A stretch of DNA of 64,000 bases, taken from IMG/VR virus record IMGVR_UViG_3300042359_000853, positions 124,001-188,000 of that record; one strand, given 5' to 3'. The position numbers and the translations under genes were made by a program. This document shows positions 1,031 through 57,778 of this stretch, one piece after another. The stretch's first letter is position 1, and every line of letters starts with the position of its first letter. The notes below the pieces were generated by a model. It worked only from the letters and a program-made list of their open reading frames with translations, made no database searches and was not told where the DNA came from.

Positions 1031-1072
1031 GAAACTTTTTTTTGATATTATATCAAAAAAAAGGCTAAAAGA

Positions 1073-1486
1073 TTAAAATGTAAAGTGCCAATGAAAGTGA
1101 TTCATTACAATCAAAAACTGAGTAGTTGTAACAAATCCAGATCTTAGAAGATCAACAATAAGATTGTAAATACCACCTCTTTTAGTAGATCTCTCTAAGA
1201 AGGTTAGTAGTGCTAGACCAACTAAAGTTGATAAAAAGAACACCCATTGACTAGAGAGAAGACCAACGGTCAAGAAAATAAAATTAAGTGTATTTATTAG
1301 AGTCCAAAAACCAAGTAGATAAAAATCTTGAGGCTCTCTAAAACTTGAAATCTCTGGAAGTTTTTTAGTGACCGTAAAAAATCCTCTGAACCAATCTTTT
1401 ATTTTATAAATTTTTACAAAATGAAAGAGCAGAAAAAAATTAGCCTGTGATAAGAAAAATAGGATAAGATAGAATATACTGGTCAT
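1073..1486 (-). CDS. Hypothetical membrane protein
   Basis: 137 aa with several hydrophobic segments. Confidence 0.6.
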   Translation of the reverse strand: MTSIFYLILFFLSQANFFLLFHFVKIYKIKDWFRGFFTVTKKLPEISSFREPQDFYLLGFWTLINTLNFIFLTVGLLSSQWVFFLSTLVGLALLTFLERSTKRGGIYNLIVDLLRSGFVTTTQFLIVMNHFHWHFTF

Positions 1487-1584
1487 AAAATTTTTAGATT
1501 ATATCTAAAAGTGTTTTTTTGTTCTAAAAATCTATATCTGCCGAGGAGAATAATTTTAATATATAACCTTGATTTTCTAAAAAT

Positions 1585-4269
1585 ATGGCCCATACACCAC
1601 TCTACAAAAGACTTAAAAATCGGGGAACATCATTTTATGCTTTCCCTGGCGCTGCTGAAGATATTTCAGCTTCTTATCAGAATGAAAATTTTAGAATGTA
1701 TTTTTCTAATTATGTTCTATTAAATTTTCCTAAACAAAATCTCTCAGCTGATGGTGCTACTAACAGTATTTATTTCGATTTTGGAACTTTTTCAAAATCA
1801 GAACTTTCTTCACCAGCTGATGATTATAGTGATGGGCTTATAGAATCGTTACGAAACTACGTAGCTAATTTTGAGGTTGTTATGAAGTCTTCGAAGCTTA
1901 ATAATACTGAATTTTATTACGATCATAATGATACAACAACACCCACTGAGAAAATATTCTGGAAATGGTGTAAGAAACTCAATCTATTCGATCTTGAGAT
2001 AGCAAACGATGGAGACGAGTATTTTGGGAATCTTCAAGAGTTTGCAAGAAATAATCTTACTAACGATGAATACTTTAAGGAATATCTTTGGAGAGAAAGA
2101 GAAATTTTTGATTTTGAAACGGTAACCTTCTACCAGACCACCAACCCATCACACACTGGAAAACTTGAAATCGAGATAAAAGGTGCTACAAATCTAAAAG
2201 TAGGAGATATTATAGAATTTATCGAACCATCTAGTTACAGCTCGGGTGATTTAGCTCGTGATTCTGGATTAACTAATCTTCTTACTACACTTTCTAGTGC
2301 AAGATCTAAAGTAGTTTATAAGACTAGTTCGTCTGGTAATGATATTATTATTGTTGATCTATATGTTGCCGCAGCTTTAAATCCGAATCTTTCTTCTACT
2401 ATAAATTTGGTTTATCATCGATTAGTTCAGTATATAGGTAACGTCAATGGTGTAAATAATGTTCAAGAATCTGATAGATCTTATACTGAAGTTTGGGCAC
2501 ATATACCCGATAATACAGGTCAAACACCAGATGTTCTTTTTAGAACCCGTATTGATAAAAATTATAAACCTGGAGTGGGTTTTCCTATTTTACCAGCACA
2601 AATACAAAGTGAAATCGCTGGTGCCGAGAATTTCAAAAATCCTATTGTGAATTCTCCACAAGATTATCCAGGTAGTTATTTCGGTCAATTTGATAATAGT
2701 TTTTATACTTATCAAATATCTACTGGTGATTCACAAAGAAGAAGAGGAGATTTTTTTGGTATATCAGGTGACGTAAATAATTTCTCAGTTAGCTCATCTA
2801 AACTAGATGGTTTATCAATTGACTTTGATAGAGATCACTATGTTAAAATGAATTCTCGTAATCAAGAGATTACAACTTTTGACGAGTTTAATATGCTCAA
2901 TGTCAATGGTAATCCACCAAAAGATTTTGAATTCAACGCCATACTTTGGTATTACGACGTGATAGATTCAAATGGTAATATCTCAAAAAATCTTTACGGT
3001 ATTACTTTTTTGGATAATCCAAATAATAATCCACTACCAAATGAAGTTGGATATCGACTGCCTAGTTTTTCAAAACTTTGTGCCAACTCCAATCAAGATG
3101 GTGTTTCTTATGCGTTCAATCTTATCTTAAACTTTGCCATAACAAATGATAATCCACAAGATGCCTATAATCCTGACGCCATAAATTCTCTTTTTAACTT
3201 TAACCTTTTTAATGAAGCTATGAGAAAGCTTTCTATGGCCAATAAGTCATTTCTACAAATACTTATCGATCAGGGAAAAATTCAAGATGAAATATTAAAT
3301 CTAAAGACCTTACTCTATTCACAAACACAGATAGAAGAGATTAATCAAAAAATTAATTTTTTAGAAAATCTTTTAAGACTTTATTCTTCTAACCAGATTG
3401 TTGGTAGTAACACTATAAGTGTAAGAAGTGTTATTCAGAATGGTAATTCCTATATAACACTTGATTCAATCGATGGTAAATACAACCCAGTTGAAGTAGT
3501 TAGAACTACAGATTTGTTTAATGTTTCAGGACCAGTTTCGTATCTTATCAAACCTTCGCAAAATAAAGATTTTTTATTAAAAGTCATTAACGATGATATT
3601 AATCCACAATTTTTAGGACAAAATATACGTTTGAATTTAACGATTGATAGAGATCTCGATTTTGGTCAAACACTGGATATTATTGTTGATGGCACAGACA
3701 ACGCCACACAAAATAAACAACTTGATATTTTTATAAGAACAGATTCTACACTTACACCTTTAATTCAAGGTCTGAACTTACCTATTTACTACAATATATC
3801 AACCAACACAACAAACACAGCTAAAAAATTCAAAAATTTCAATTTCAATACAAATTTTAATCAAAATGTTCTTCTTTTTTCTGATTATAGTCTTCTGGTT
3901 CCTTTTCAAGAACCAAATAAGTTGATCAAAAAAACGATGAAAGTTGGTGATTATGTTCTTTTTGAGGATTTTGTAGTTGGTTCTGCTTCTACGGTTGATT
4001 TTTCAGGACAATACAGATTATTAAATATTGATTCGAATGATTCGAAAATGTGGTTTGATCTTTCCACAAATCCGGTGGTAACAAATTATGTTTTTGGATC
4101 GGGCGTTAGTTTTCCTATTTGTTTAGACAATTATCTGTGTAATGCTTTTAGTTTAAAATATAATAAAGGATACAAGATTTCTATAACAAGAATAGTCTCT
4201 ACACTCACTGGTAACATTTCAACGGATTATCAGATAATTTCACAAAAGTTTTACGAAGATACAATTTAA
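1585..4269 (+). CDS. Large putative virion structural protein (baseplate/tail-associated)
   Basis: 894 aa, Asn/Ser/Phe-rich beta character, central coiled coil, TTTTAATATATA upstream; no catalytic motifs seen. Confidence 0.5.
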   Translation: MAHTPLYKRLKNRGTSFYAFPGAAEDISASYQNENFRMYFSNYVLLNFPKQNLSADGATNSIYFDFGTFSKSELSSPADDYSDGLIESLRNYVANFEVVMKSSKLNNTEFYYDHNDTTTPTEKIFWKWCKKLNLFDLEIANDGDEYFGNLQEFARNNLTNDEYFKEYLWREREIFDFETVTFYQTTNPSHTGKLEIEIKGATNLKVGDIIEFIEPSSYSSGDLARDSGLTNLLTTLSSARSKVVYKTSSSGNDIIIVDLYVAAALNPNLSSTINLVYHRLVQYIGNVNGVNNVQESDRSYTEVWAHIPDNTGQTPDVLFRTRIDKNYKPGVGFPILPAQIQSEIAGAENFKNPIVNSPQDYPGSYFGQFDNSFYTYQISTGDSQRRRGDFFGISGDVNNFSVSSSKLDGLSIDFDRDHYVKMNSRNQEITTFDEFNMLNVNGNPPKDFEFNAILWYYDVIDSNGNISKNLYGITFLDNPNNNPLPNEVGYRLPSFSKLCANSNQDGVSYAFNLILNFAITNDNPQDAYNPDAINSLFNFNLFNEAMRKLSMANKSFLQILIDQGKIQDEILNLKTLLYSQTQIEEINQKINFLENLLRLYSSNQIVGSNTISVRSVIQNGNSYITLDSIDGKYNPVEVVRTTDLFNVSGPVSYLIKPSQNKDFLLKVINDDINPQFLGQNIRLNLTIDRDLDFGQTLDIIVDGTDNATQNKQLDIFIRTDSTLTPLIQGLNLPIYYNISTNTTNTAKKFKNFNFNTNFNQNVLLFSDYSLLVPFQEPNKLIKKTMKVGDYVLFEDFVVGSASTVDFSGQYRLLNIDSNDSKMWFDLSTNPVVTNYVFGSGVSFPICLDNYLCNAFSLKYNKGYKISITRIVSTLTGNISTDYQIISQKFYEDTI

Positions 4270-5406: not shown

Positions 5407-6330
5407 ATGAATACTATCTATAATTTTAAGAACTGGATTTCAGAATCAAAGTTGATAAACTTTTCACTTTGGGTATCAAACTTAACCGAGAAGGATCCTT
5501 CACTTTTGGATATTATTGATGAATATATCGAGGATAAAGATCCTACAATTGGATTAGAAAATCTTCTAGATACATTGAATAGCAGCCAAAAAGAAAATCT
5601 TCGTAAAAGAATAGAGGATAAACTATCCAAAGATTCACCTAAGCAGGTTACTGCGTCCATTCAGTCTATAGATCCTATTAGGCAAAAAACACTCTTCAAA
5701 CTTTTCGTAAAAACACTATCTTTTATTGATGGTATTGAGGTAGAAAAAAAACCAAAGAGGGATTGGCTTGTTTATTTTACAACAAAAAAGATCTGGAGAG
5801 AAAAGTTATTAAATCTCTCTACTAGAATAACTTCTATCAATCAAGAAGTTGAAAAAATACCAGGAGATCAAAAATGGGTAAAAGCTTTCTGGGGAGTAAA
5901 AAATGACGGACTTTTTTGCTATGGTTTTTATACAAAATCTGAATTTTACCCTATACAAGAGGTAAAATTTACAGGAAATTTTTCTAGGTATATATCTTCG
6001 TTGGGTGCTAAAATACTCTGGGAAATAAAAAGAGATTTTATGGAGGTCACTCCCCAAAACCTACTTCTTCTTGGAAAAATTAAAACTTCAGTTGATGGGT
6101 TTGATTTTCCAAGTAGTGATAAGTTTTCTCTATGGGAGAAGCACCTTTTACATTTCGGTTGGTATGGACTAGGTGTTTGGAGTAGTAGAGAAATCGACCC
6201 TTCTTCATTTGAGAAAATAAAGGAAGAAATAAAGGAAAAATTGAGAAGTTATAGGTGGTCGAATAAGGTAAAGATCTCACTTAGAGCCGAAGAGTTTTGG
6301 ATACATCTTTACATTCAGATTAAACAATAA
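5407..6330 (+). CDS. Hypothetical protein with N-terminal capsid-targeting-like motif
   Basis: Begins MNTIYNFKNWISES. Confidence 0.55.
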   Translation: MNTIYNFKNWISESKLINFSLWVSNLTEKDPSLLDIIDEYIEDKDPTIGLENLLDTLNSSQKENLRKRIEDKLSKDSPKQVTASIQSIDPIRQKTLFKLFVKTLSFIDGIEVEKKPKRDWLVYFTTKKIWREKLLNLSTRITSINQEVEKIPGDQKWVKAFWGVKNDGLFCYGFYTKSEFYPIQEVKFTGNFSRYISSLGAKILWEIKRDFMEVTPQNLLLLGKIKTSVDGFDFPSSDKFSLWEKHLLHFGWYGLGVWSSREIDPSSFEKIKEEIKEKLRSYRWSNKVKISLRAEEFWIHLYIQIKQ

Positions 6331-6348
6331 CTTATTTTCCCATACAAG

Positions 6349-7122
6349 ATGATTATGGAACTAGTTCGTCTTATCAAAAGTCTTGTAAGAGGTAATAAAG
6401 ATCTAGATTTAGGTCAATTACCCTCCCGTGGTTTGTTTTATCCTGAAGATTTCTCGATTAAAATCAAAAGAGCATCTTCAGAGCAGATCGTTCACTATGA
6501 AACCAATTTCGTAGAAAAAGATATGTTTTCTATTATTGAGTCTATTAAACGTGTAGTAGAAGCAAACGCTGTTTTTCCAGAAAATTATAATTTCAGATAC
6601 CTTAAAGTTATTGATCTTATCTGGGTATTTTTGGAAATTGTTAAATTTACACAGGATAAAAAAATAAACATCAACTATTTTGATAGTGATTCGTCACTTG
6701 TAAAGGAAGTTGAGATCTCTAATGAAAGTTTCAACTACTTTAATTTTTCAAAATTTGAGAGTTTTTACAACGCTGAAGAAAAAATCTTCGAGATGCAGGG
6801 TTACCGATTTTCGTTACCTTCTATTGGCGTTGAATCAGATTTACTTAAATATCTTAACTCGAAAAGTGCAAAAAAATCCGGAAGAGATCTAACAGATATG
6901 AACTACAACTTCATTTTCTTTCTGGGTATGAAAGATAGTATTACAAAAAAAGAAATAGAAAATCTAATTACTATTTTCAATGATGATTTAGATAAAAAAG
7001 AGATGGAAAAAATCGAAGCAATTATCGAAGAGTTTTCCAAGTCTATTAAATATACCTTGAAAATAGGTAAAAAAGTAATCGATCTTCAGTCAAAGATTCA
7101 ACTCAAAGAAATATTCAGATGA
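6349..7122 (+). CDS. Putative baseplate hub assembly protein (T4 gp26/gp51-like)
   Basis: LPSRGLFYP motif near N-terminus and later FSLPSIG; size fits. Confidence 0.45.
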   Translation: MIMELVRLIKSLVRGNKDLDLGQLPSRGLFYPEDFSIKIKRASSEQIVHYETNFVEKDMFSIIESIKRVVEANAVFPENYNFRYLKVIDLIWVFLEIVKFTQDKKININYFDSDSSLVKEVEISNESFNYFNFSKFESFYNAEEKIFEMQGYRFSLPSIGVESDLLKYLNSKSAKKSGRDLTDMNYNFIFFLGMKDSITKKEIENLITIFNDDLDKKEMEKIEAIIEEFSKSIKYTLKIGKKVIDLQSKIQLKEIFR

Positions 7123-7182
7123 ACTATATAAATAAAATTAGAAAAGGCGGTTGAAGTTTTTTCTAATTTTATATATATCTTA

Positions 7183-10100
7183 ATGAATTTTACGATTGAG
7201 TGGTTTCAGTACATGACCTCAGATCTGGGTAATCCCAGAGTTTTTTCGATAAATAGTTTTCCGACTGCTAAAATCGCGGTCTCGATAGAAAGTAGCATCT
7301 TTCGTCTGTGGATAAATTCAGGCATTCGGTTTCAAGAGCCTGTTTCTCTAATACTTAACAATTGGACACACTTCGCTATTGTTTATACAAACGGTTCAAT
7401 AAAAATCTATAAAAACGGTCAAAAAATAGGAAATACCATTGAATATTATTCTGGTATGATCACTGATTATGATGATAAACTTTACATCGGAACTGATCTC
7501 GAAGAAGATTCTTATTTTTCTGGAAGATTATCAAATTTTAGATGGACGCAAGATGAAGTGTATTCATCAAACTTCAATCCATTGGCACAAAATTACGATG
7601 TATTAGCTGATACGATTTTATTATTGAAATTTGATGATATCAATGATTTTGTTTATGATAGCTCAGATACTGGCAAAGACACTTATGGATTCACTCTTTC
7701 TTGGAGCTCTACGAGTCCTATTGGTGGAAGTGGTTCAGTTGTTTTCAACGGTATTGATGGATATCTATATGTAGAACCGGTTGATGATTTTGATTTTTCT
7801 GCCGCTAGTATAACACCAACACAGACACCAACTCAAACCTTGACACCGACACCATCTCTAAGTATAGTTGCAACAAGTTCTACAACAACTACAACAACCA
7901 CGACTACTTCAACTTCTACTACTTCAACAACTACTTTAGAGCCAAGAGTAAATTATACAAGTAGAGTAAAATTTTTGTATAATAAAATAACTAAAATAGC
8001 TAGACGTGGTAAAGATTACTACTTCGAATGGGAACTGTTAGTTGATGAATCCTTAAAGCAAAAAGAATTAGGACTACTATCAGATGTTATGTTGAAATAC
8101 TTTGGTATAAACTGGGACAGATATCCGACCTTGGAAGATTTCAAGAAAAAATCTTGGCCACATATAAGATCTGTTACCGAAGGAGTGCAGAATGTTGAGC
8201 TTAAAAAAATATCAGATGCAAAAGGTGTTTACCAAATAGGTTGGGATTTCTATCTCGTATCTAACAACTATAGTATTGGACAAATCAAGGAACTTTTTGA
8301 GGATGGTAAGGAGATATTGAGAGTTTCTACACTTCTACAAATAGAAGATTTAACTTCAGCTACCTCAAGTATTTACGAAAAATATACCACTGGCATAGAT
8401 CTACTGAAATCAGATTATTTACTTATTTCACCTACACCCACCCCTACACAAACACCTACACCAACCGTAACGGTCACTCCTACAAAAACACCAACTAGAA
8501 CTCCAACACCAACTAGAACTATGACACCGACGGTCACTCAAACTCCAACAGTGACCGCAACACCAACTGTAACACCAACTGTAACATCAACTCTGACACC
8601 CACAGTTACACCATCTGTAACTGAAACGCCCACACAAACCTCAACTGTAACACCAACACAAACCGTAACACCAACCGAAACTTCTACTCAAACACCTACT
8701 CAAACACCAACTATTACACCTTCTGTGACTTCAACTATCACACCTACCGTTACATCAACACCAACAGAAACACCCACTCAAACATCGAGTGAGACTCCTA
8801 CCTCTACCGTTACACCTACTTTAACTGTTACACCGACTAGGACCGTAACACCGACCAATACACAAACACCTACAACCACACCAACTTCAACAATAACAGA
8901 AGGGTCGATAGCTTCGGGTGCTTTCTTCTACTTTGATCCAGGTAATACATCTTCTTATAGTGGCTCAGGAACTACTCTAAATGACATTAGTGGTAATGGT
9001 AATAACGGCTCTATATTCGGAAGTCCAGTTCATACATCTGGTGCGGGTGGATACTTCACCTTTGATGGTGTTAATGATTACATTTTGAGTCCAGACATTT
9101 ATTTCGGAGCTACCGAAACACATACTATTGAAGTTTGGATACGTCCTACCGCTGTGGATGATTGTATATGGTCCGATCTTGGACAGCCTACAATAAATGA
9201 TGGATATCATTTTGCCGGGGCACAAATATTACAAACAGGACCATTCAATCAAATCATTACTTCTTTGTGGAATGGAACTGCTGTAACTAGAGTAGTCAAT
9301 GGTGCGGGTAGTTATCTTAATACCTGGAAGCAAGTAGTTAGAGTGTATAACGGTAGTGTATTAACATCATATCTCGATGGGGTCATCGGTGGAACAATTT
9401 CAATTGCATATGATTCTCCACACAATGATGGAATCACCGATTGGTATTTAGCTTTTGGTGCTATTGATACGACTACTTACTTGGGCTCGGTTGCTGGTTA
9501 TTTTGCTGGTGGATATGGTATTATTCGATATTATAGAAGAGCTCTCTCTGCTAGTGAGGTTCTACAAAATTATAACTCAACGGTCTATAGCTACAACACC
9601 ACTACAACAACTACAACAACTATTGCACCTTCTTCAACACCAACTCCTACTCAAACACCTACTCAAACACCCACTTCTAGTCAAACACCAACCACCACAC
9701 CAACATCAAGTATAACAAACACACCAACTCAAACTCCTACAAATACTCCTTCTGTTACAACAACATCGGCTCCTGTTACTCTAGGGTTGGTTATTGAGTT
9801 GGATGCCTATGATTCTTCCAGCTATCCAGGGTCAGGAACAACAGTTTCTAACTTGCGGTCACCTGGAACCTACGATCATACGCTTACGGGCTCATCATTT
9901 ACAACTTTAAATGGTATCAAATGTTTTGACTGTTCATCAGGAACAAAGAGAGTTGTTGTAAATGGAACTGGTCCTCTCCTACCTACTACTGGATATACCT
10001 ATATTACTTGGGGTAGATTGAAAAACGATACCAGTGGATTTAGAACTTTACTTTACACAAATTCTCCTAAATATACACCAATAACTATCCCCGATGGTTC

Positions 10101-15793: not shown

Positions 15794-15837
15794 TTGTTAT
15801 TTTATGATTTTATCTTAAAAGGTTGCGAACAAAAAAG

Positions 15838-25338: not shown

Positions 25339-25385
25339 AGTAGGGGGTGTGGTTGTTTATATATATTTCTAAAAAAAGTTTAATC

Positions 25386-27250: not shown

Positions 27251-27330
27251 AATCTCTACTGAAACTCTACCCCTCGGGCATTTGGTCCTTTAGCTCCACC
27301 ACTATATTTTTATCTAAAACATAGAAAACT
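27240..27330 (-). ncRNA. Candidate small non-coding RNA with intrinsic terminator
   Basis: Minus-strand TATCATATATA upstream, GC-richer core AGTGGTGGAGCTAAAGGACCAAATGCCCG, 9-bp hairpin AGGGGTAGA/TCTACCCCT followed by a U-run; no convincing ORF. Confidence 0.4.
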
Positions 27331-27360
27331 TATCTTATATATGATATTTTAGGAAATGGT

Positions 27361-34570: not shown

Positions 34571-34619
34571 GAAGTTTTTTCTTTTGGTATGAGTAAGTTC
34601 GTAAAAAGTTGTAAATAGA

Positions 34620-34814
34620 TTAGATCTGCTCTAACCATTCACTGAATCTTAAAACCTTCCTCTCTGATACCTTTTGTGGAAGTTCTCTGTAATCTACGTC
34701 AGTCCATTCCTTATCGAAAACCCAGTGGTATTTCTTGGGAGCTTTCTTTTTAGAACCCCACTTATTTCTAAGAGCCCAGATAAGTTTATATTGTTTTTTT
34801 GATGTTGCTGGCAT
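34620..34814 (-). CDS. Small basic protein, probable internal/core protein
   Basis: MPATSKKQ..., C-terminal KVLRFSEWLE motif. Confidence 0.6.
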   Translation of the reverse strand: MPATSKKQYKLIWALRNKWGSKKKAPKKYHWVFDKEWTDVDYRELPQKVSERKVLRFSEWLEQI

Positions 34815-34844
34815 GACTTATTGTTTTTTTGGTATATATAAAAT

Positions 34845-40452: not shown

Positions 40453-40536
40453 ATTTCTAAAGTTTTTTTTAGTTATATATTAAAGTTTTTTTTTCTCTAT
40501 TCCTAACATTTTCATAAAAAATATTATAATTAGATT

Positions 40537-47709: not shown

Positions 47710-48651
47710 TTAAATCTTGATTCCTGTCACTGGATCGTAGTTTAAAATAAGAATCTCACGACCTTTTTCTTGTGGTTTTTTTGTTGATGCGTTATTTCCA
47801 CCTGAGGCAGAGGATCGATTAACTTCTTTTTCATACCACACATATTTATCTTTCGGAAGAAGCTCTTCAAGTAATGGAAAGTAATAATAAGATAGAGACC
47901 ACCTTGAAGATGTAGTTTTAAGAAGTTCTAATAACCTTCTATGTGAAGCGGGACCGAATACACCTTCAGAATCTGCACCATACCAAAATAATCTTTTAGC
48001 ATCATCTTCACCCTTTTCATTTGGTCTAAAATAAGGTGGATCTAGATATAGATAAGTTGTTGGGCTATCCCATTTTCTAATCAGAACCTCGAAATCTAGA
48101 TTATTAAATTCAGTGATTGAATTTAACTTCTGCTCATATTTGCCCTCTTTAAGTTTTTTTAGAAGTGTAAGAAGTTTTAGTCGGTCTTTATCTTTTTTGT
48201 AACCATTAAACCCAGCTCCTCTTGGATAAACCGAATTGTGAGAAGATGTGATTAAAAACGCGTAGATTGCTGCTCTCTTTAGGTCAGGAATCTCGAAATC
48301 TGTAATATCCAAGAAATCATTCTTGGTATATTTGTGGTAGATAGATTTGTAAAAATCCCATTTTTTTAAGGGGTCAGTTTCTGTCGTTCTTAGAGGACCA
48401 GATAAGAACTTTTCTAGAACATCTACGAATGCATCTTTTTGAGAAGCACATTTGAAGAGATTGACTTGGTGTCTGTTTTTATCATTGAAGATGACTTTGT
48501 CAAAGACCAACTCTGGATCATCCATGTAAGTGGCAAAGCTACCACTGAATGGTTCAATATAACAATCTATACCGGTTTTGGGAATTTTTTTATTGATAAA
48601 TTCCATAAAAACATTCGAACTCTTGCCGCCAAAAAAACTGATAATTGACAT
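47710..48651 (-). CDS. dam: DNA adenine methyltransferase (Dam/D12 class), copy 2
   Basis: SFFGGKS, EPFSGS, FNDKN, LDPPY. Confidence 0.9.
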   Translation of the reverse strand: MSIISFFGGKSSNVFMEFINKKIPKTGIDCYIEPFSGSFATYMDDPELVFDKVIFNDKNRHQVNLFKCASQKDAFVDVLEKFLSGPLRTTETDPLKKWDFYKSIYHKYTKNDFLDITDFEIPDLKRAAIYAFLITSSHNSVYPRGAGFNGYKKDKDRLKLLTLLKKLKEGKYEQKLNSITEFNNLDFEVLIRKWDSPTTYLYLDPPYFRPNEKGEDDAKRLFWYGADSEGVFGPASHRRLLELLKTTSSRWSLSYYYFPLLEELLPKDKYVWYEKEVNRSSASGGNNASTKKPQEKGREILILNYDPVTGIKI

Positions 48652-48720
48652 TTTACTTTCTATATTTAATTTTTGTCTTAGTTATAGATACTACTCCATC
48701 GAAAGTTTCACTACTTTCAT

Positions 48721-48753: not shown

Positions 48754-49103
48754 TGGTGGAGGTGCTGGGATTCGAACCCAGGTTTCTACATTTACCTAAA
48801 TAATCAATCATTCACAAGCTTAGAACTCTTTTCTAAGAGAACCAACTATCGGATTTTATCGAAGAACCTTCCGAAAAAACTTTTGAGGCTATTTATAGAG
48901 TTACCTCATTCTCGGAAACGTCTAGGCTACGGCCAATCTGTTTGCCTTTAGGATGTTGTTGCGTAGGGCGAATACTAAGTCTTCAACGCTTCCTACTTCA
49001 TTCGTGTTGCCACTTAAAGTTTTCATACAACTTATGAATCGGTGAGTATGATCCGATGCTTGCTTGATTACCCGAATAAATGAGTCAAAAGCCATTCACC
49101 CCC
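48754..49103 (-). ncRNA. ssrA: tmRNA
   Basis: 5' GGGGGTGAATGGCTTTTGAC, 3' GGGTTCGAATCCCAGCACCTCCACCA; 7-bp acceptor stem with G3.U wobble and encoded CCA; internal tag ORF 48922-49011 ending LAVA*. Confidence 0.93.
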
Positions 49104-49110
49104 GAGTGTT

Positions 49111-49123
49111 GATATATATAAAA
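49111..49123 (-). promoter_or_regulatory. Representative phage late-type promoter motif TTT(T/A)ATATATA
   Basis: Sits about 8 nt upstream of the tmRNA 5' end; about 20 further copies upstream of genes in the window. Confidence 0.65.
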
Positions 49124-49138
49124 TCGAAAAGATAAGTT

Positions 49139-51960: not shown

Positions 51961-52005
51961 TAAACAATCGGTTTTTAATATATATATAAAATTTAAAGGA
52001 ATAAA

Positions 52006-53322
52006 ATGTCAAAATTAGTAAACTTGAACACAATCAGTGATTCAGACCAAATCGATAAGATCTTGGATTCTGATCTGATGATATTTGAAGATGTTCAAGG
52101 ATCAAAAATATTAGTTCAATGGGATGGTGAAAAATTCACGATAAAACCAAAATCTTTATCTTCAGAACCTATCAACCTAGTTGATTTAGCTATGCAGAAC
52201 TATTATAACGCGGCTTTTGACTACCTTAATTCGTTAGATAAAAGAGTGAAAACATTACTCAATAAAAAGTGGTGGTATGTTTTTGAGTATTTCTCTGATA
52301 ATCAACCTGCTAATATAGCTTACACAAGAACCCCAAAAAACGGATTAGTTCTAACATCCATCATTAAAGGTCGTGATTATAACTATACTATCGAGGAGCT
52401 TGATGAATATTCCAGACTTTTCAATGTTGATCCTCTGCCGATTATTTTTCGGGGAAGACTTTCACAAAAAACAAGAGAAGCTATTAAATATTTTCTCAAC
52501 ACCTCTGAGAAAGATTTAGAATATGTTTTTGGTGAAAAATCTTTTGCTTTTTTCTTTTACAAAATACTTAACCCTAACACACAAAACTCTTTTCTGATGG
52601 AAGATGAGTTTCAAAATAATCTAGAAAAACTGATTATTAAAACACCAGATACCGAAACAACATTTGCTATCTTAAATCCACTCTATAAAAAAATATCTGA
52701 TAATGGATCTACTGAATTTGTTGAAGTATATACTCTTATTTTAGTTAACTTTTTGAGTTTTTGTCAATCCGTGGATCTGAAACGTATAAAGTTGGATGCC
52801 ACCAATCGTGAAGAAGCCTATATTAGCCTAATATGTAAACTATTTAATGTGTATATGACCGAGGTTAAATCTGATGTTTTAGATTTTGAGTTTACGATAC
52901 CTCATTTTTTCAATAAAGATAAGTTTAAAATAAATCGTGAGCTTATTTCTGATGTAGCTACAAAGAATATTATCTCACAAGATCCGAAAATAGAATATAT
53001 CTTCAAAGTGGTCCTGGGATCATTCAACAGAAAAAAGAAAAAACCGATTGGTGTTTTTAATAATAATACCTTAAATCTTTTCAATAATTTTGTAGATACT
53101 TTAGAAGCTCGTGTTGATGAGTATCTTAACAAAAAATCAGAAATAGAACTCACCAAAAAGGGTCTTCTAGATTTTAGTGATTATTTTGATATTAAATATG
53201 ATACTGATTCACAAGGTCAAGTTTATCCAGATGTCTATAAAGAGTTTGAGAAGGGAGCTGATGAGAAATCTAAAAAAGATAAATCACCAAAAGGATTCTC
53301 AATTCCAGAAAAAAAACCTTGA
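52006..53322 (+). CDS. RNA-ligase (Rnl2-like) fold protein lacking catalytic lysines
   Basis: IFEDVQGS at motif I position, VFEYF (III), PIIFRG, EKLIIK (IV), FAILNP (V). Confidence 0.5.
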   Translation: MSKLVNLNTISDSDQIDKILDSDLMIFEDVQGSKILVQWDGEKFTIKPKSLSSEPINLVDLAMQNYYNAAFDYLNSLDKRVKTLLNKKWWYVFEYFSDNQPANIAYTRTPKNGLVLTSIIKGRDYNYTIEELDEYSRLFNVDPLPIIFRGRLSQKTREAIKYFLNTSEKDLEYVFGEKSFAFFFYKILNPNTQNSFLMEDEFQNNLEKLIIKTPDTETTFAILNPLYKKISDNGSTEFVEVYTLILVNFLSFCQSVDLKRIKLDATNREEAYISLICKLFNVYMTEVKSDVLDFEFTIPHFFNKDKFKINRELISDVATKNIISQDPKIEYIFKVVLGSFNRKKKKPIGVFNNNTLNLFNNFVDTLEARVDEYLNKKSEIELTKKGLLDFSDYFDIKYDTDSQGQVYPDVYKEFEKGADEKSKKDKSPKGFSIPEKKP

Positions 53323-53345
53323 ACTTTTAATCTATAATATCATAC
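53322..53345 (+). promoter_or_regulatory. Representative putative middle promoter AACTTTT-N12-CATAC
   Basis: Same 19-nt AAC-to-CATA offset as the motifs at 55182-55204 and upstream of gp52 (34587-34610, minus). Confidence 0.5.
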
Positions 53346-53444: not shown

Positions 53445-54014
53445 ATGAAATATAAAGTAAGTGAATATGCTAAATTGAAAAACGTTACCTACCGAACCGT
53501 TTGGAACTGGATAAAATCAAATAAGATAGACTATCAAACTACAAACACCGGTGGTCTGGTTATAGTTGAAGAAGATCCCAATTCAAATAAAGAGGTAGCA
53601 GTTTATGCTCGTGTTTCTTCATCAGAGAATAAAGATAATCTAGAAAGACAGAAAAATAGATTATTGGACTATTGTGCTTCTAGAGGATATAAAGTTTCTA
53701 GTATAGTAACAGAGATTGGATCTGGATTGAACGATAAAAGACCAAAATTAGAAAAAATTCTAACAAATAGATCTATAAGTATAATTGTAGTTGAACATCG
53801 GGATAGATTATCAAGATTTGGATTTAATTATATAGAAAAACTATTAAATTCAAATGATAGAAGGATAGAGGTAATAAATGAGCCTCTTAATGAAAAAGAA
53901 GATTTAATACAAGACTTTGTATCTATAATTACTAGTTTTACCGCTAGATTGTATGGACAAAGAAGAAGTAAAAGAAGAACCGAATTTCTTATAAAAAATC
54001 TACAAAGTGAATGA
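53445..54014 (+). CDS. tnpA: IS607 transposase (MerR-like HTH + serine recombinase)
   Basis: VTYRTVWNW; VYARVSS..LERQ; EIGSGLN; EHRDRLSRFG; ARLYG. Confidence 0.95.
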   Translation: MKYKVSEYAKLKNVTYRTVWNWIKSNKIDYQTTNTGGLVIVEEDPNSNKEVAVYARVSSSENKDNLERQKNRLLDYCASRGYKVSSIVTEIGSGLNDKRPKLEKILTNRSISIIVVEHRDRLSRFGFNYIEKLLNSNDRRIEVINEPLNEKEDLIQDFVSIITSFTARLYGQRRSKRRTEFLIKNLQSE

Positions 54015-55180
54015 TCCTAGTTGAAAAGCACATAATTAGATCAGGTAAATATTTCAATCAACTAATGGAAGTTACTAGATTGAGTAAAAATCTTTATAAT
54101 TCTGGTTTGTATGCTGTGAGGCAGCACTATTTTGAATACAAGAAGTTCTTAAATTATGTAAATCTTAATAATATGTTTGTTGAACAGAAACAACAAGATT
54201 ATTACAAACTACCAGCAAAGGTTAGCCAACAAACACTGAAAATGGTGGAACAAAATTTCAAATCATTTTTTGGATTACTAAAATCTGAAAAAACTAAAAA
54301 GGTAAAAATACCTAAATATCTGGATAAAAATTCCAGTTTTTTAACAATTTGGACAAATCAAGCAGTTTCTCTCAAAAAGAAGGGTTACTTAAAGCTATCA
54401 GGAACTGATGTCTATATCAAAACAGATATTGATCATATCAATCAAGTTAGAGTTGTTCCTAGAAATAATGAGTTAGTAGTAGAGATATTATATGAAGTCC
54501 GGGAAAATGATTTAAAGAAAGATAACGGAAAATATTCATCTATAGATCTTGGCATCAATAATCTCATGACTTTATCGGGAAACACAACAAAACCTATTAT
54601 AGTCAATGGGAAACCACTAAAATCTATTAATCAGTATTACAACAAGAAAAAATCCGAAATTCAGGGTAAATTAGAAACAATCAACAAAACAAAAAAGAGC
54701 AAAAAATTAAATAAACTAACAAACAAAAGAAACAACAAAATAAATGATTATCTACACAAATCAAGTAAAATAATTATCAATCATTTAGTTTCCAAAGATA
54801 TATGTACTTTAATAGTTGGATACAATCAATACTGGAAACAAGAGATAAATATTGGAAAAAAGAATAATCAGAATTTTGTTTCAATTCCCTATCTAAAATT
54901 ATTAAATATGTTAGAATACAAATGTAAAAAAGAAGGCATTAACTTTGTCAAAAACGAGGAGAGTTATACATCCAAGTGCTCGTTTATAGATGGTGAGGAA
55001 ATTAAAAAACATACAAAATATTTAGGTAAAAGAATAAAAAGAGGATTATTCGAGAGCGCGTCTGGTAAATTGATAAATGCGGATTTGAATGGATCTCTAA
55101 ATATTCTCAAAAAAGTAGTTGGGGAATTTCAGTACCCAATAGAGGTGTGTAGCACGCCAAAAGTTATTAATTTAGCTTAG
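54011..55180 (+). CDS. tnpB: TnpB RNA-guided endonuclease
   Basis: SKNLYN, SIDLGINN (RuvC-I), DYLHKSS, EESYTSKC, NADLNGSLNI (RuvC-III). Confidence 0.95.
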   Translation: MILVEKHIIRSGKYFNQLMEVTRLSKNLYNSGLYAVRQHYFEYKKFLNYVNLNNMFVEQKQQDYYKLPAKVSQQTLKMVEQNFKSFFGLLKSEKTKKVKIPKYLDKNSSFLTIWTNQAVSLKKKGYLKLSGTDVYIKTDIDHINQVRVVPRNNELVVEILYEVRENDLKKDNGKYSSIDLGINNLMTLSGNTTKPIIVNGKPLKSINQYYNKKKSEIQGKLETINKTKKSKKLNKLTNKRNNKINDYLHKSSKIIINHLVSKDICTLIVGYNQYWKQEINIGKKNNQNFVSIPYLKLLNMLEYKCKKEGINFVKNEESYTSKCSFIDGEEIKKHTKYLGKRIKRGLFESASGKLINADLNGSLNILKKVVGEFQYPIEVCSTPKVINLA

Positions 55181-55216
55181 AAACTTTTTCTATGGATTTC
55201 CATAAAATTAGTAGCT

Positions 55217-56374
55217 ATGAACAAGGATTATTTACTTCACCATTATCCAACCTATTTAGATAGATATTTTTCTGGGAAAACTATAAAATTTCGAGATCAA
55301 ATTTTGAAGCGTGATTATTTTGTTCATCTGATCTCTTCGCTACTTACTAAATATTATTACACTAAAGAGAACGAGTTCAAGTTGAATGCTACTATCTTAA
55401 GAGAAACTTATGGTAAGTGGTATAACTATTATATGGAATATTTAGTTCATAACGGTATTCTTATTGTTTATAAAAATCATCAAAGGGGTAGGCGGTCAAG
55501 AATCTACCAGCTCTCTATCTCTATCTTAACGAGTCCTGTAAGTAGATATCTGAATGGTGATGAGATTTTGTTGAAAAAAAGAAAAAAATGGACAGATTAT
55601 AATCTCAAATCAAGTGAATCACCTATTTGTATGGAGATAAGACAAAGGTTGATAGAAGATTTATATAGCGTTCAAATACAATATGATAAGGCTTGTTTTG
55701 AACTCTTATCAAAAGAACACCTCTCTCGAGTTGAACTTGAAAGAAATAACTTCGCGGTGGAATGTATTCGTGAAGGCGAAATCTATTTTCACTTTGATGA
55801 TTATGGAAGATTTCACACACCTTTCACTATACTTCCCAAAAACGTTAGAAATAACTGCCTTACTATTCAAAATAGTGATATCACAGAGATTGATATACCA
55901 AACTCACAGCCACTATTCCTTCTAAAACTCATTCAGATGAATAGGCACATTCCGATAGAAGAGGTAGAGTATGAACTATTCTCAGAATTAGTTAGAGATG
56001 GAGTTTTCTATAAACATCTTTCTAAAATCTCTGGAAATAAAAATGTTAAAGAAGTGAAAAAAAATGTTTTTGAGATCTTTTTCGGACATAATAATCAAAA
56101 CTCTACATCTAGATTATTTTCTGGTTTTTTTCCAAGTATCTTTAATTTTCTAAGGGTCATTAAAAGGGAACGTGGTGATTACCGATGGGTTTCCCATCAA
56201 CTACAAAGATTAGAATCAGATTTTATTTTCAATAAAGTTATTAAAAAAATCTATAGTAGAGATCCCAATATCAAACTATTCACGGTTCATGATAGTATTT
56301 TTTGTAGAAAAGATAGGGTTGGGTTTGTAGATAACATCTTTATTTCAGAAATAAAAAAAGAGTTTGATTTCTAA
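55217..56374 (+). CDS. Compact family-A polymerase-palm-like protein
   Basis: GRFHT, EIDIPNSQP (motif A), KEVKKNVFEIFFG (motif B-like), LQRLES, TVHDSI (motif C). Confidence 0.6.
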   Translation: MNKDYLLHHYPTYLDRYFSGKTIKFRDQILKRDYFVHLISSLLTKYYYTKENEFKLNATILRETYGKWYNYYMEYLVHNGILIVYKNHQRGRRSRIYQLSISILTSPVSRYLNGDEILLKKRKKWTDYNLKSSESPICMEIRQRLIEDLYSVQIQYDKACFELLSKEHLSRVELERNNFAVECIREGEIYFHFDDYGRFHTPFTILPKNVRNNCLTIQNSDITEIDIPNSQPLFLLKLIQMNRHIPIEEVEYELFSELVRDGVFYKHLSKISGNKNVKEVKKNVFEIFFGHNNQNSTSRLFSGFFPSIFNFLRVIKRERGDYRWVSHQLQRLESDFIFNKVIKKIYSRDPNIKLFTVHDSIFCRKDRVGFVDNIFISEIKKEFDF

Positions 56375-56398: not shown

Positions 56399-56938
56399 AT
56401 GTTTGATTCTCTACATCAGTCAAGTTTTATTATCTTTTTCGATTATGATCACGCTCAAAAATCTATTATAGAATCCATTCTTTATTCAAGAAATTGGTTT
56501 ATTCGTAATATATCTAAAGTGGACGATACACTTACAAGTGAAGCTCTTTTTTGCTACACACTTGATGATGTAAACTTGAAATCTGAAGCTCTGTATCTTT
56601 TACAAAAAACAGGCCTTCGTCACTGCGTTGTTTCTATTGAAAACTCTCTATTCATACTGACTCGTTCGAATGAATCTATAAAAATTTCTAGAGTAGTAGA
56701 TGAGAACGATATCGAGCCGGTGATATTATACTTTATCATTCAAAATATGCCCTATAGATTTGTAAGAGAAAAAACTTATAATCTGGTTTCTATGAAAGAA
56801 GATTTAGAAAATGGAACCCAAGTTCAAGTTTTAGACGGTAAGGTGTGGATTGACATGGTTGTAGAAGATTTAGATAGTGAATGGAAAAACCTCTACGGAA
56901 TCCTATCTAAATACGGCAGGGTTCGTATTCAAAGATAA
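56399..56938 (+). CDS. Hypothetical protein
   Basis: ORF with late motif upstream. Confidence 0.6.
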   Translation: MFDSLHQSSFIIFFDYDHAQKSIIESILYSRNWFIRNISKVDDTLTSEALFCYTLDDVNLKSEALYLLQKTGLRHCVVSIENSLFILTRSNESIKISRVVDENDIEPVILYFIIQNMPYRFVREKTYNLVSMKEDLENGTQVQVLDGKVWIDMVVEDLDSEWKNLYGILSKYGRVRIQR

Positions 56939-56945
56939 AAAATAT

Positions 56946-57692
56946 TTAGGCCAATCGATTAGAAAGGCCTATTTTAGGTCTCGAGTTGTTGATATAAGCC
57001 TCTAAGTTCTTATCATCGATCATCCTGAATTGATTGAATAGTTGAAGATTTTTCTGGTAGAGTTCCATATCGGGTTGGCCTCTGTGGTGCCAAAAATGAA
57101 ATGCTCGATAGGGCATTTGGTGGTTAGATAGAAGACGAGATACTTTAACACTCTGCGCATCGTCTTCGGCTCCCCAACCGATATATTCTTCAGGCCATCC
57201 GGCAATTCTTTCGATAGCAGGTCTTCTAAAAATAGTAATACCTCCACAGAAAGGAACTTTTTGATGATCGTTTTCACCTCTACCTGGACGGTTGATTCCT
57301 AAAATTTGATTGAAATCAAGATTATTCTCCCACTCCTCTAGATCAACTACTGATTTGTAGGGATTCACTACATCGTAGAACTGCGTTTGATTGAGTGAAT
57401 CAATTAGTTCATTTGGATTCATAATCACATCGGCATCTCCAAAGACCACAACCTGACTAGTTGAGTGTTTAAGACCTACGTTATAGGCTAAAGATTTAAT
57501 GAAAGGCCCGTCGTTATACATAAAAATATGTTTACCTGGTAGGTTTAGATGATCGATTTTGGTGTTTCTATCTTGTTCTACTACAATAATTTCAACACCC
57601 TGAAAACCGGACACCCATTCAAGGACTTTTCTTAGGTTCATAATCCTATCTTGTGAAAATCTGAAAGCTATAATAAATGAGAATGGAGGCAC
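56946..57692 (-). CDS. GT-A glycosyltransferase (GT2/GT7 galactosyltransferase-like)
   Basis: IVVEQD, YNVG, FGDADV (DxD), GG, GWGAEDD, HFWH. Confidence 0.88.
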   Translation of the reverse strand: MPPFSFIIAFRFSQDRIMNLRKVLEWVSGFQGVEIIVVEQDRNTKIDHLNLPGKHIFMYNDGPFIKSLAYNVGLKHSTSQVVVFGDADVIMNPNELIDSLNQTQFYDVVNPYKSVVDLEEWENNLDFNQILGINRPGRGENDHQKVPFCGGITIFRRPAIERIAGWPEEYIGWGAEDDAQSVKVSRLLSNHQMPYRAFHFWHHRGQPDMELYQKNLQLFNQFRMIDDKNLEAYINNSRPKIGLSNRLA

Positions 57693-57778
57693 TTTATGTT
57701 ATTTTTTCTTTTTATAGTTTTTTTTAGACTATAAGTTTTTTTTTCATAGAATATAGCTGGAAATTAAAAAATATTCCG

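What the first reader, a model, noticed from the sequence alone, without database searches (positions are those of the whole stretch)
1049..57737. Third promoter class AAC(T/A)4-5...(C/T)ATA(A/C) upstream of replication/recombination genes
AAC followed 18-21 nt later by YATA occurs upstream of 1486, 6349, the DUF151 gene, gp52, gp47, dam copy 2, the GT gene and the PolA-like gene, with an AATC variant upstream of uvsX. Three copies share an identical 19-nt offset (34610-, 53322+, 55182+). AAC is the typical -35 core of ECF sigma factors, which suggests a middle phase driven by a phage or host ECF-like sigma rather than by MotA/AsiA.
Basis: partly seen in the sequence, partly recalled or inferred. 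Interest (0 to 1): 0.6.

Follow-up and report, generated by a model that had tools for sequence, protein, structure and literature searches.

The report
Phage sigma-factor promoter class, AAAC-N17-TATAA
This fragment of a huge Bacteroidota phage carries a real third class of promoter-like sites (AAAC, 17-18 bases, TATAA) in front of DNA-replication genes. The phage encodes an ECF-type sigma factor that most likely reads these sites, taking the role that MotA/AsiA play in phage T4.

Summary
The window is part of a 227.6-kb IMG/VR phage record, estimated 39% complete, related to the 634-735 kb "Mahaphage" genomes with predicted Bacteroidetes hosts. In intergenic DNA, AAC lies 19-21 nt upstream of YATAA 3.6 times more often than at other offsets (P=2e-8). 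The peak recurs in three relatives (P=1e-16, 3e-17, 2e-8) and is absent from 50 kb of T4. The refined consensus is tAAAAC-N17/18-TATAA.

The sites precede genes for gp32, gp44, gp46, gp47, UvsX, Dam, thioredoxin, the gp55-like late sigma and a tmRNA. A separate TTTATATATA class precedes portal, prohead protease, endolysin and virion genes. Orthologues in the closest relative keep the motif (odds ratio 8.5, P=4e-4).

The phage encodes a 206-aa ECF-type sigma, outside the window. It sits behind host-type TAnnTTTG promoters, and 12 of 13 relatives carry the AAC-N17-TATAA site upstream of this gene. No MotA or AsiA was found.

Two of them flank an IS607-like insertion, and the N15 sites do not fit. 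No expression data could be obtained.

The parts
57712..57737 (-). Class C site AAC-N18-TATAA upstream of the glycosyltransferase gene 56946-57692. A second, weak AAC-N18-CATAA lies at 57694-57719.
   Evidence: 16.4 bits with the PWM trained on relatives. The W01 orthologue also carries a class C site.
51963..51987 (+). Class C/A hybrid: TTAAAC-N17-TATATATAAA upstream of gene 52006-53322 (function unknown).
   Evidence: Top PWM hit in the record, 16.9 bits. It also matches the class A core.
49114..49138 (-). AAAC-N17-TATATAT box, 10 nt upstream of the 5' end of the tmRNA match.
   Evidence: 14.9 bits. The tmRNA is confirmed by Rfam. Because this gene is not translated, the site shows that the signal acts on transcription rather than translation.
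48754..49103 (-). Phage-encoded tmRNA gene served by the site above.
   Evidence: ARAGORN. Rfam RF00023, 65.3 bits, E=3.4e-23, full-length match.
48682..48707 (-). Class C site GAAAC-N18-TATAA upstream of the second Dam-like methyltransferase, 47710-48651.
   Evidence: 14.4 bits. Pfam MethyltransfD12.
27318..27342 (+). Class C site AAAAC-N17-TATAT, 63 nt upstream of the gp46/Rad50-like ATPase 27405-29216. A host-type TATATTTG box lies between the site and the gene.
   Evidence: 14.6 bits. Pfam ABC_tran and SMC_N. The class B box at 27384 is.
1048..1074 (-). The 'AATC variant': TTAATC-N18-TATAAT upstream of the uvsX/RecA-like gene 2-1030. It also reads as an extended -10, TGATATAAT.
   Evidence: 13.1 bits despite the A-to-T mismatch. 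Pfam RecA. Sequence.
55182..55205 (+). AAC-N16-CATAA (or AAC-N18-TAAAA), 11 nt upstream of gene 55217-56374 (function unknown). One of the three strict copies.
Evidence: The site lies outside the IS right end, which maps to about 55165. The W01 orthologue has no class C site.
1499..1523 (-). Class C site AAC-N17-TATAAT upstream of gene 1073-1486 (function unknown).
   Evidence: 10.7 bits. Sequence.
25357..25380 (-). TTAAAC followed by TATAA after N16, or a TAAAC box in the N18 register, upstream of gene 24910-25338 (function unknown).
   Evidence: 10.9 bits in the N18 register and 10.2 in the N16 register.
40505..40529 (+). Class C site AAC-N17-TATAAT, 7 nt upstream of the gp47/Mre11-like phosphoesterase 40537-41661.
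   Evidence: 8.7 bits, with a weak -35 flank. The W01 orthologue also carries AAC-N17/18-TATAA. Pfam Metallophos.
34587..34610 (-). Strict copy AACTTTT-N12-CATAC, 16 nt upstream of the TTG start of the gp52-like topoisomerase subunit 33218-34570. Doubtful member.
   Evidence: -8.8 bits with the clade PWM. The W01 and W02 orthologues instead have AAC-N16-TATATATAAA directly before the ATG. Pfam DNA_topoisoIV.
53322..53345 (+). Strict copy AACTTTT-N12-CATAC, immediately after the stop codon of gene 52006-53322 and about 100 nt upstream of the IS607-like tnpA. Doubtful member.
   Evidence: -11.1 bits. It lies at or near the unmapped left end of the insertion.
53445..55180 (+). IS607-like insertion: serine recombinase 53445-54014 and TnpB 54011-55180. 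It separates two genes that are adjacent in the relative W01, and two of the three strict copies flank it.
   Evidence: Pfam Resolvase, OrfB_IS605 and Cas12f1-like_TNB. Synteny with W01. Related TnpB 3' regions diverge after about 55165.
6323..6345 (+). AAC-N15-CATAC upstream of gene 6349-7122.
   Evidence: N15 spacing has zero weight in the trained model and the box is CATAC, giving -8.3 bits.
15802..15824 (-). AAC-N15-CATAA upstream of the BFN/DUF151+UVR nuclease gene 15203-15793.
   Evidence: -12.8 bits. Pfam BFN_dom and UVR.

Best explanation
The sites form a genuine, clade-conserved, two-block promoter class, which I call class C: -35 element tAAAAC, a 17-18 nt spacer, and -10 element TATAA.

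The most likely reader is host RNA polymerase core carrying a phage-encoded ECF-type sigma factor. This is a 206-aa protein encoded at record coordinates 85972-86592, about 37 kb upstream of the window.

The proposed cascade has three steps.
1. Host sigma-A reads TAnnTTTG promoters, which include the two in front of the ECF sigma operon.
2. The ECF sigma reads class C promoters. These serve the genes for SSB (gp32), clamp loader (gp44), Rad50/Mre11 (gp46/47), UvsX, Dam, thioredoxin, glycosyltransferases, the tmRNA and the gp55-like late sigma. In most relatives they also serve the ECF sigma gene itself.
3. The gp55-like sigma reads the -10-only TTTATATATA(A) promoters of the portal, prohead protease, endolysin and virion genes.

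Many class C boxes lie only 5-8 nt from the ATG, so those mRNAs would be leaderless or nearly so.

Shown: the motif, its spacing, its conservation, the gene sets behind it, and the presence, conservation and self-association of the sigma. Inferred: which sigma reads which class, and the temporal order.
For: - Offset peak in the record itself: 28 against 7.8 expected, P=1.9e-8. It was also found without bias among all 3- and 4-mers.
- Replication in relatives: LR745206 79 against 26.6, LR756504 70 against 21.0, LR756501 24 against 5.9. T4 (50 kb) has none.
- EM model from two relatives: tAAAAC, N17/18, TATAA. Scanning the record's own upstream regions at 13 bits or more gives 17 sense hits, 8 antisense and 2.4 shuffled.
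- The class is kept at orthologues while the spacers differ: own against W01, 9 of 16 versus 12 of 91, odds ratio 8.5, P=4e-4.
- A site sits in front of a non-coding tmRNA gene.
- The sigma has Pfam r2 and r4_2 domains, passes TIGR02937 (82.6 against 42.9), is nearest to SigW structure 5WUQ at E=7e-16, and has more than 1600 homologues, some on contigs up to 594 kb.
- The sigma gene lies behind TAATTTTG and TACATTTG boxes.
- 12 of 13 relatives have the class C site upstream of the sigma gene.
- Functions of class A genes are.
- The class A core has no fixed AAC.
- A gp55-like sigma is present. It has a class C-like site in the record (14.5 bits) and a clear one in W01.
- No MotA or AsiA was found.
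Against: - There are no transcript data.
- The -10 element TATAA is unlike the CGT-type -10 of characterised ECF sigmas, and it overlaps in sequence with the class A box. Some sites are A/C hybrids, for example 51963 and 49138, so the two classes may not be cleanly separate.
- In this record the sigma gene itself has no class C site.
- Conservation of the class at orthologues is not significant for the two more distant relatives, where numbers are small.
- The antisense control is about half the sense count.
- The record is only 39% complete, so the absence of MotA/AsiA is weak evidence.
- My gene calls are crude: longest ATG-started ORFs chosen greedily.
- The relatives share ancestry, so the replicates are not fully independent.
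Confidence: 0.6

Rival explanations
1. Class C is not a separate class. It is the gp55-type (class A, -10-only) promoter with a degenerate TATAA box, and the upstream AAAC is an auxiliary element or an activator site. All of these genes would then be read by the gp55-like sigma.
For: The TATAA and TATATATA boxes overlap in sequence and sit at the same short distance from the ATG. Hybrid sites exist at 51963 and 49138. In this record AAC also shows small peaks at 16/18/20 before TATAT. The W01 and W02 topoisomerase genes have AAC-N16-TATATATAAA.
Against: Properly anchored class A cores show no fixed AAC position. In W01 the peak is specific to TATAA and absent for TATAT. The gene sets differ: DNA metabolism against virion and lysis genes. 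The gp55-like protein has only a region-2-like part and no region 4 to read a -35 element.
Confidence: 0.15
2. AAAC is the binding site of a MotA-like phage activator or sigma appropriator that redirects the host sigma, and no dedicated phage sigma reads the -35 element.
For: T4 middle promoters have a comparable geometry, with an activator box near -30 plus a -10 element (PMC2988021). About 61% of the genome is missing from the record.
Against: Pfam finds no MotA_activ or AsiA match. Bacteroidota sigma-A uses TAnnTTTG, which class C lacks. A conserved two-domain sigma with a class C site upstream of its own gene is a simpler account.
Confidence: 0.1
3. A host alternative or ECF sigma, not the phage one, reads the sites.
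For: Bacteroidota encode many ECF sigmas, and the phage sigma resembles the Bacteroidetes subfamily model TIGR02985 (87 bits, below its cut-off).
Against: The motif travels with the phage sigma across genomes that share only 37-64% sigma identity, and it sits upstream of the phage sigma gene in 12 of 13 relatives. The preferred spacing shifts to N18 in the most divergent genome, which suggests co-evolution with the phage protein.
Confidence: 0.08
4. This rival concerns only the three 'identical 19-nt offset' CATA copies. They are a coincidence helped by the IS607-like insertion, being junction, target or end sequences, and they are not members of the promoter class.
For: Two of the three flank the insertion. 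They score -8.8, -11.1 and -2.3 bits with the clade model. The CATA variant shows no peak in W01, W03 or W04. MAFFT finds no homology among the three beyond the 11 shared positions. About 0.7 copies are expected genome-wide by composition (my estimate).
Against: All three are intergenic, and two are correctly placed before start codons. Intergenic AAC...CATA peaks at offset 19 in this record, 7 against about 1.4. The IS right end maps upstream of the 55182 site, so that copy is phage DNA.
Confidence: 0.45

Closest known systems
Bacillus subtilis ECF sigma W and its promoters (TGAAAC-N16-CGTA; promoter consensus from my own knowledge, structure 5WUQ)
   Same: A two-domain sigma of about 190-200 aa. 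It is the best solved-structure match to the phage sigma (E=6.6e-16 over residues 30-189). The -35 element ends in AAAC, the spacer is 16-18 nt, and the sigma gene is positively autoregulated.
   Different: The -10 element here is TATAA, not CGTA. The sigma is phage-encoded and appears to run a developmental stage rather than a stress response. No anti-sigma factor was identified.
Phage phiEco32 gp36 sigma, assisted by gp79 (PMC12276001)
   Same: A phage-encoded two-domain sigma (sigma2-like N-terminal and sigma4-like C-terminal domains) that replaces the host sigma after the early phase. Its C-terminal domain contacts the -35 region.
   Different: gp36 reads AATGTA centred at -11.5 and drives both middle and late genes. 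Here a second, gp55-like sigma is also present, and the motif is AAAC-N17/18-TATAA. No homologue of the gp79 helper was looked for.
T4 middle transcription by MotA/AsiA sigma appropriation (PMC2988021, PMC6024815)
   Same: The same gene set is served (replication and recombination genes, and gene 55). It holds the same place in a cascade that ends with gp55-dependent, -10-only late promoters.
   Different: No MotA or AsiA was found. The -35-region element is AAAC rather than the MotA box. A dedicated sigma is proposed in place of a remodelled host sigma.
Bacillus phage SPO1 sigma cascade (host sigma A, then gp28, then gp33/34; PMC13401047 abstract)
   Same: Successive phage-encoded sigmas replace the host sigma for middle and then late genes.
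   Different: The sigmas and promoter sequences are unrelated, and the host is a Firmicute. Here the late sigma is of the T4 gp55 type.

Membership tests
ECF (group 4) sigma-70 family: the phage sigma at record 85972-86592 | Only regions 2 and 4, about 200 aa | tested here: met
   PF04542, 59.9 bits (cut-off 24). PF08281, 42.9 bits (cut-off 25.7). ORF of 206 aa.
ECF (group 4) sigma-70 family: the phage sigma at record 85972-86592 | Passes a curated ECF model | tested here: met
   TIGR02937 sigma70-ECF, 82.6 bits against a cut-off of 42.9. The narrower equivalog and subfamily models (SigW, Sig70_bacteroi1) fall below their cut-offs.
ECF (group 4) sigma-70 family: the phage sigma at record 85972-86592 | Cognate promoters with AAC in the -35 element and a 16-18 nt spacer | tested here: met
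   tAAAAC with N17/18 in four genomes. The pairing of sigma and motif is inferred, not measured.
ECF (group 4) sigma-70 family: the phage sigma at record 85972-86592 | A CGT-type -10 element | tested here: not met
   The -10 block is (a)TATAA(t). AAC-N16-CGTA and AAC-N16-CGTC have 0 and 1 intergenic hits.
ECF (group 4) sigma-70 family: the phage sigma at record 85972-86592 | Positive autoregulation, meaning its own promoter class upstream of its own gene | tested here: inconclusive
   Present in 12 of 13 non-identical relatives. Absent in this record, where only TAnnTTTG boxes precede the operon.
ECF (group 4) sigma-70 family: the phage sigma at record 85972-86592 | A co-transcribed anti-sigma factor | not tested
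   A 95-aa ORF overlaps the sigma start on its upstream side. Its function was not examined.
T4 MotA/AsiA middle-promoter system | Presence of MotA and AsiA | tested here: not met
   PF09114 and PF09010 have no match at E<=1 in the 227-kb record. The record is only 39% complete.
T4-type late promoter (read by gp55) | A -10-only A/T-rich octamer with no -35 element, and a gp55 homologue present | tested here: not met
   This describes class A (TTTATATATA with no fixed upstream element), and a gp55-like protein is present (phrog_234 at E=1e-7; 27% identity to T4 gp55). Class C differs because it has a positioned AAAC.
Bacteroidota sigma-A promoter | A TAnnTTTG element at -7 | tested here: not met
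   There are 38 intergenic TAnnTTTG sites, and they form a separate set that includes the ones in front of the sigma operon. Class C boxes lack the TTTG.
IS607-family transposon ends (for copies 53322 and 55182) | The site lies inside the element's terminal sequence | tested here: inconclusive
   Two diverged TnpB loci share the 3' scaffold up to about window 55165 and then diverge, which places 55182 in the flank. The left end could not be mapped.

The most novel reading that the evidence does not exclude
Across the whole clade of huge (Mahaphage-type) Bacteroidota phages, a self-amplifying phage ECF sigma has taken the place of MotA/AsiA. This gives a three-sigma cascade: host sigma-A (TAnnTTTG), then the phage ECF sigma (AAAC-N17/18-TATAA, often producing leaderless mRNAs), then the gp55-like sigma (TATATATA). 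If so, the temporal programme of uncultivated megaphages could be read directly from sequence.
Probability: 0.45. Interest if true: 0.7.

Novelty: new variant of a known kind. Interest (0 to 1): 0.6.

Why it matters
Nothing is known experimentally about how the largest known phages (600-735 kb, uncultivated, with Bacteroidota hosts) schedule their genes. The two papers I read on huge-phage and jumbo-phage genomes mention sigma factors only in passing (PMC7162821, PMC7824862), and my literature searches turned up no promoter analysis for this clade.

A sequence-readable three-class promoter code, together with a small and probably portable ECF sigma, would have three uses:
- It would allow temporal annotation of hundreds of metagenomic megaphage genomes.
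- It would show an alternative to sigma appropriation in T4-like phages.
- It would offer an orthogonal sigma/promoter pair for Bacteroidota genetics.

Tried and rejected
- **Strict motif as the definition of the class.** AACTTTT-N12-CATA has only 3 copies, all in the window, and about 0.7 are expected by composition. MAFFT finds no wider homology among them. They score poorly with the clade model.
- **Dinucleotide shuffles as a null model for the loose regex.** These are uninformative, because shuffling destroys the abundant TATATATA boxes. I replaced them with offset histograms and control trimers.
- **Anchoring on all intergenic AAC.** The signal is too dilute.
- **A fixed AAC upstream of the class A core.** None was found.
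- **IS-end explanation for 53322 and 55182.** Ends of related IS607-like elements (L117/L118, L130/L134) contain ACT(n)TT-like words. However, the conserved TnpB 3' scaffold ends near 55165, which puts 55182 outside the element. The question is left open for 53322.
- **Empty-site comparison.** The W01 intergenic region between the two orthologous genes shows no evident similarity by eye, and a second contig carries the identical insertion.
- **RNA evidence.** I therefore did not use read laying and did not try another route.
- **Near-identical phage records.** Megablast of 20 kb found none.
- **The 'PolA-like' label.** PF00476 is absent from the record.
- **Other notes.** No alternative genetic code was used or needed: coding density is 93% under table 11.

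Full report
**What the window is.** The 64-kb window is bases 124001-188000 of a single 227,583-bp IMG/VR virus record. It has 33% G+C, and CheckV estimates it to be 39% complete. Megablast finds no near-identical phage record. The gp52-like topoisomerase subunit is closest (50-56% identity) to the uncultured 634-642 kb phage genomes LR745206, LR756502 and LR756504, and 36% identical to the 735-kb LR756501. These are the 'Mahaphage' genomes with predicted Bacteroidetes hosts (PMC7162821). Three observations in this record fit a Bacteroidota host:
- a protein with a T9SS C-terminal sorting domain;
- 38 intergenic TAnnTTTG boxes, typically TATCTTTGtaaaaaa;
- the absence of Shine-Dalgarno-like leaders, judged by eye.

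The window encodes T4-like replication and recombination genes: UvsX, gp46/47-like, gp52/gp39-like topoisomerase subunits and two Dam-like methyltransferases. It also encodes a T4-type portal, a tmRNA and several metabolic genes.

**Two other promoter-like classes.** K-mer enrichment and an anchored PWM give class A, with core TTT(A/T)ATATATA(n)A. It has 60-86 copies and usually ends 2-20 nt before the ATG. It has no conserved upstream element. Class A precedes the genes for the portal, a virion structural protein, the prohead protease, the endolysin and a RuvC-like resolvase. This is a typical late set, analogous to the T4 -10-only late promoters. A gp55-like minimal sigma is encoded at record 220946-221311. 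Class B is the host-type TAnnTTTG box.

**Checking the observation.** All listed sites exist. The strict form AACTTTT-N12-CATA occurs three times in the record, all in the window and all intergenic. On its own this is only weakly beyond composition. The decisive test was positional. In intergenic DNA, AAC is followed by [CT]ATAA at offsets 19/20/21 in 7/12/9 cases, against about 2.6 per offset elsewhere. That is 28 observed against 7.8 expected (P=1.9e-8). Five control trimers are flat. Scanning every 3- and 4-mer at every offset upstream of intergenic TATA puts AAC at 20, AAAC at 21 and ACTT at 19 at the top, apart from T-runs.

**Replication in relatives.**

| Genome | Bases scanned | Offsets | Observed | Expected | P |
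|---|---|---|---|---|---|
| This record | 227,583 | 19-21 | 28 | 7.8 | 1.9e-8 |
| LR745206 (W01) | 634,780 (complete) | 20-21 | 79 | 26.6 | 1.6e-16 |
| LR756504 (W03) | 400,000 | 20-21 | 70 | 21.0 | 3.2e-17 |
| LR756501 (W04) | 400,000 | 21 | 24 | 5.9 | 2.1e-8 |
| T4 early/middle region | 50,000 | 19-21 | 0 | 3.2 | 1.0 |

In W01 the peak is specific to TATAA and is absent for TATAT and CATA. A two-block EM trained only on W01 and W03 converges on tAAAAC(t), a spacer of N17 (60%) or N18 (39%), and (a)TATAA(t). Applied to this record's upstream regions at 13 bits or more, it gives 17 sense hits, 8 antisense and 2.4 in shuffles. Among 107 reciprocal-best orthologue pairs between this record and W01, the class is retained although the spacers differ. 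Nine of 16 class C genes have a class C orthologue, against 12 of 91 other genes (odds ratio 8.5, P=4e-4). For W03 and W04 the numbers are too small to be significant.

Scores below are from the clade model.

| Site | Score (bits) | Verdict |
|---|---|---|
| GT, 57737- | 16.4 | supported |
| dam-2, 48707- | 14.4 | supported |
| uvsX AATC variant, 1074- | 13.1 | supported |
| 55182+ read as N18-TAAAA | 12.2 | supported in this register only |
| 1523- | 10.7 | supported |
| gp47, 40505+ | 8.7 | supported, and conserved in W01 |
| 6323+ (N15) | -8.3 | not supported |
| gp52, 34610- (CATAC) | -8.8 | not supported |
| 53322+ (CATAC) | -11.1 | not supported |
| DUF151, 15824- (N15) | -12.8 | not supported |

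The 'three copies with identical 19-nt offset' are therefore the least typical members.

**The IS607-like insertion.** Two of the three strict copies flank an insertion made of a serine recombinase and TnpB. The insertion separates genes that are adjacent in W01. Two diverged TnpB loci share the 3' scaffold up to about 55165 and then diverge. This places the 55182 copy in phage flank DNA. The left end could not be mapped. A CATA variant may exist in this phage, because intergenic AAC...CATA peaks at offset 19 with 7 cases against about 1.4. It is not seen in the relatives.

**Evidence that the signal is transcriptional.** One site sits upstream of a non-coding gene. Its TATATAT box ends 10 nt before the 5' end of an Rfam-confirmed tmRNA (RF00023, 65.3 bits). 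In protein-coding cases the box is often very close to the ATG: exactly 5 nt in 12 of 77 W01 sites (against 2% of controls), 5-7 nt in 20 of 69 W03 sites, and 5-8 nt in 8 of 19 sites here. This implies leaderless or near-leaderless mRNAs.

**Genes served.** Class C genes in this record encode the following:
- gp32-like SSB, gp44-like clamp loader, gp46-like and gp47-like nuclease subunits, and UvsX;
- Dam, a thioredoxin-domain protein, a homing-endonuclease-like protein and a ClpB-like ATPase;
- two glycosyltransferases, an rRNA-adenine-dimethylase-like methyltransferase, a T9SS-CTD protein and the tmRNA;
- the gp55-like late sigma, at 14.5 bits here and with a clear site in W01.

No recognisable virion gene is in the set. 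This matches the content of T4 middle transcription units (PMC2988021).

**The reader of the motif.** Pfam Sigma70_r2 and Sigma70_r4_2 both hit one 206-aa ORF at record 85972-86592. It passes the ECF superfamily model TIGR02937 (82.6 against 42.9 bits). Its closest solved structure is B. subtilis SigW (5WUQ, E=6.6e-16). It has more than 1600 homologues of about 200 aa, and several lie on contigs of 400-594 kb. It is conserved in W01, W02, W03 and W04 at 64, 63, 45 and 37% identity. In this record the operon is preceded by two host-type boxes, TAATTTTG and TACATTTG, so it should be expressed early. In 12 of 13 non-identical relatives (ten IMG/VR loci plus W01 and W02), an AAC-N16-18-TATAA site lies 70-110 nt upstream of the sigma gene, often just downstream of a TAnnTTTG box. 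Only 12-17% of genes have such a site within 300 nt (P about 6e-7, or about 4e-4 if the relatives are collapsed to eight groups). A promoter class that sits in front of the sigma gene is the classical signature of ECF autoregulation, and it links this sigma to this motif. MotA_activ and AsiA models find nothing in the record.

**Proposed mechanism and its limits.** The cascade is: host sigma-A (TAnnTTTG), then the phage ECF sigma, then class C genes including the gp55-like sigma, then class A late genes. The following are established here:
- the motif, its spacing and its conservation;
- the gene sets behind each class;
- the sigma family, its conservation and its self-association.

The following are inferred:
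- the pairing of each sigma with a promoter class;
- the temporal order;
- leaderless initiation.

The weak points are these:
- No RNA data could be obtained.
- The -10 element is not ECF-like, and it overlaps the class A box, with some hybrid sites.
- There is no autoregulatory site in this particular record.
- Gene calling was crude.
- The relatives are not phylogenetically independent.

**Comparison with known systems.** In function this resembles phage sigma cascades: SPO1 gp28 followed by gp33/34, and phiEco32 gp36 (PMC12276001). It fills the slot of T4 MotA/AsiA. In family terms the sigma is an ECF-type (group 4) sigma with a SigW-like -35 word but an atypical -10 element. The jumbo-phage comparative paper notes that T4-like jumbo phages carry a minimal sigma and a 'more complete' sigma, and the passages I read give no promoters (PMC7824862). 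My searches found no promoter analysis for the Mahaphage clade. I therefore rate this a new variant of a known kind, of moderate to good interest, resting entirely on computation.

Noticed in passing
window 48754-49103 (-): The phage encodes a full-length tmRNA (Rfam RF00023, 65.3 bits; ARAGORN predicts a tag peptide ending in ...ANRLAVA). It has its own AAAC-N17-TATATAT promoter-like site.
   Followed up: partly
window 53445-55180 (+): An IS607-like element (serine recombinase plus TnpB) is inserted between two genes that are adjacent in LR745206. Its tnpA has a phage class A box, TTAATATATAGAT, 2 nt before the ATG. The conserved TnpB 3' (omega-RNA-like) scaffold ends near 55165. More than 100 related TnpB genes lie on large IMG/VR phage contigs.
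   Followed up: partly
record 50343 (gp32-like gene; outside the window), and loci L023, L024, L208, L210, L212, L213: A conserved (A)ACGGCAAT / GGCAAT word sits 0-2 nt before the ATG of the gp32-like gene (this record, W01, W03). It is repeated in the leader and at the ATG of the ECF sigma gene in many relatives. It may be a translational operator or a substitute for a ribosome-binding signal.
   Followed up: no
window 34815-34844, 51961-52005, 39957-40536 and other divergent intergenic regions: The palindromic TATATATA class A core sits between divergently transcribed genes, for example between 34620-34814(-) and the gp39-like gene 34845(+). One box could therefore serve both directions.
   Followed up: no
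window 18508-19554 (-), 31937-32665 (-), 41665-42471 (+), 36684-37592 (-): Auxiliary metabolic genes: a glutamine-synthetase-like protein, a PfkB-family sugar kinase, an NAD-dependent epimerase/dehydratase and an FkbM-type methyltransferase.
   Followed up: no
window 14337-15203 (-) and 47710-48651 (-): There are two D12-class (Dam-like) adenine methyltransferases. Only the second has a class C site, and it is 72% identical to its W01 orthologue.
   Followed up: no
record 5740-7314 (outside the window): A phage protein carries a type IX secretion C-terminal sorting domain (Por_Secre_tail, E=1.4e-5, just under the Pfam cut-off). It sits behind a class C-like site and points to a Bacteroidota host.
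   Followed up: no
window 1047-1054 (-): The uvsX upstream region also reads as a perfect extended -10 element of the E. coli type (TGATATAAT). This is unexpected for a Bacteroidota phage.
   Followed up: no
whole record: No family-A DNA polymerase (PF00476) is detectable in the 227 kb, so the 'PolA-like' label in the finding is unconfirmed. The record is about 39% of a genome that is probably near 600 kb.
   Followed up: partly
LR756501 (W04), 300-700 kb: In the most divergent relative (sigma 37% identical) the AAC-TATA peak shifts to offsets 19 and 21, which corresponds to AAC-N16-TATATAA or N18-TATAA. This hints that the spacer and -10 element co-evolve with the sigma.
   Followed up: no
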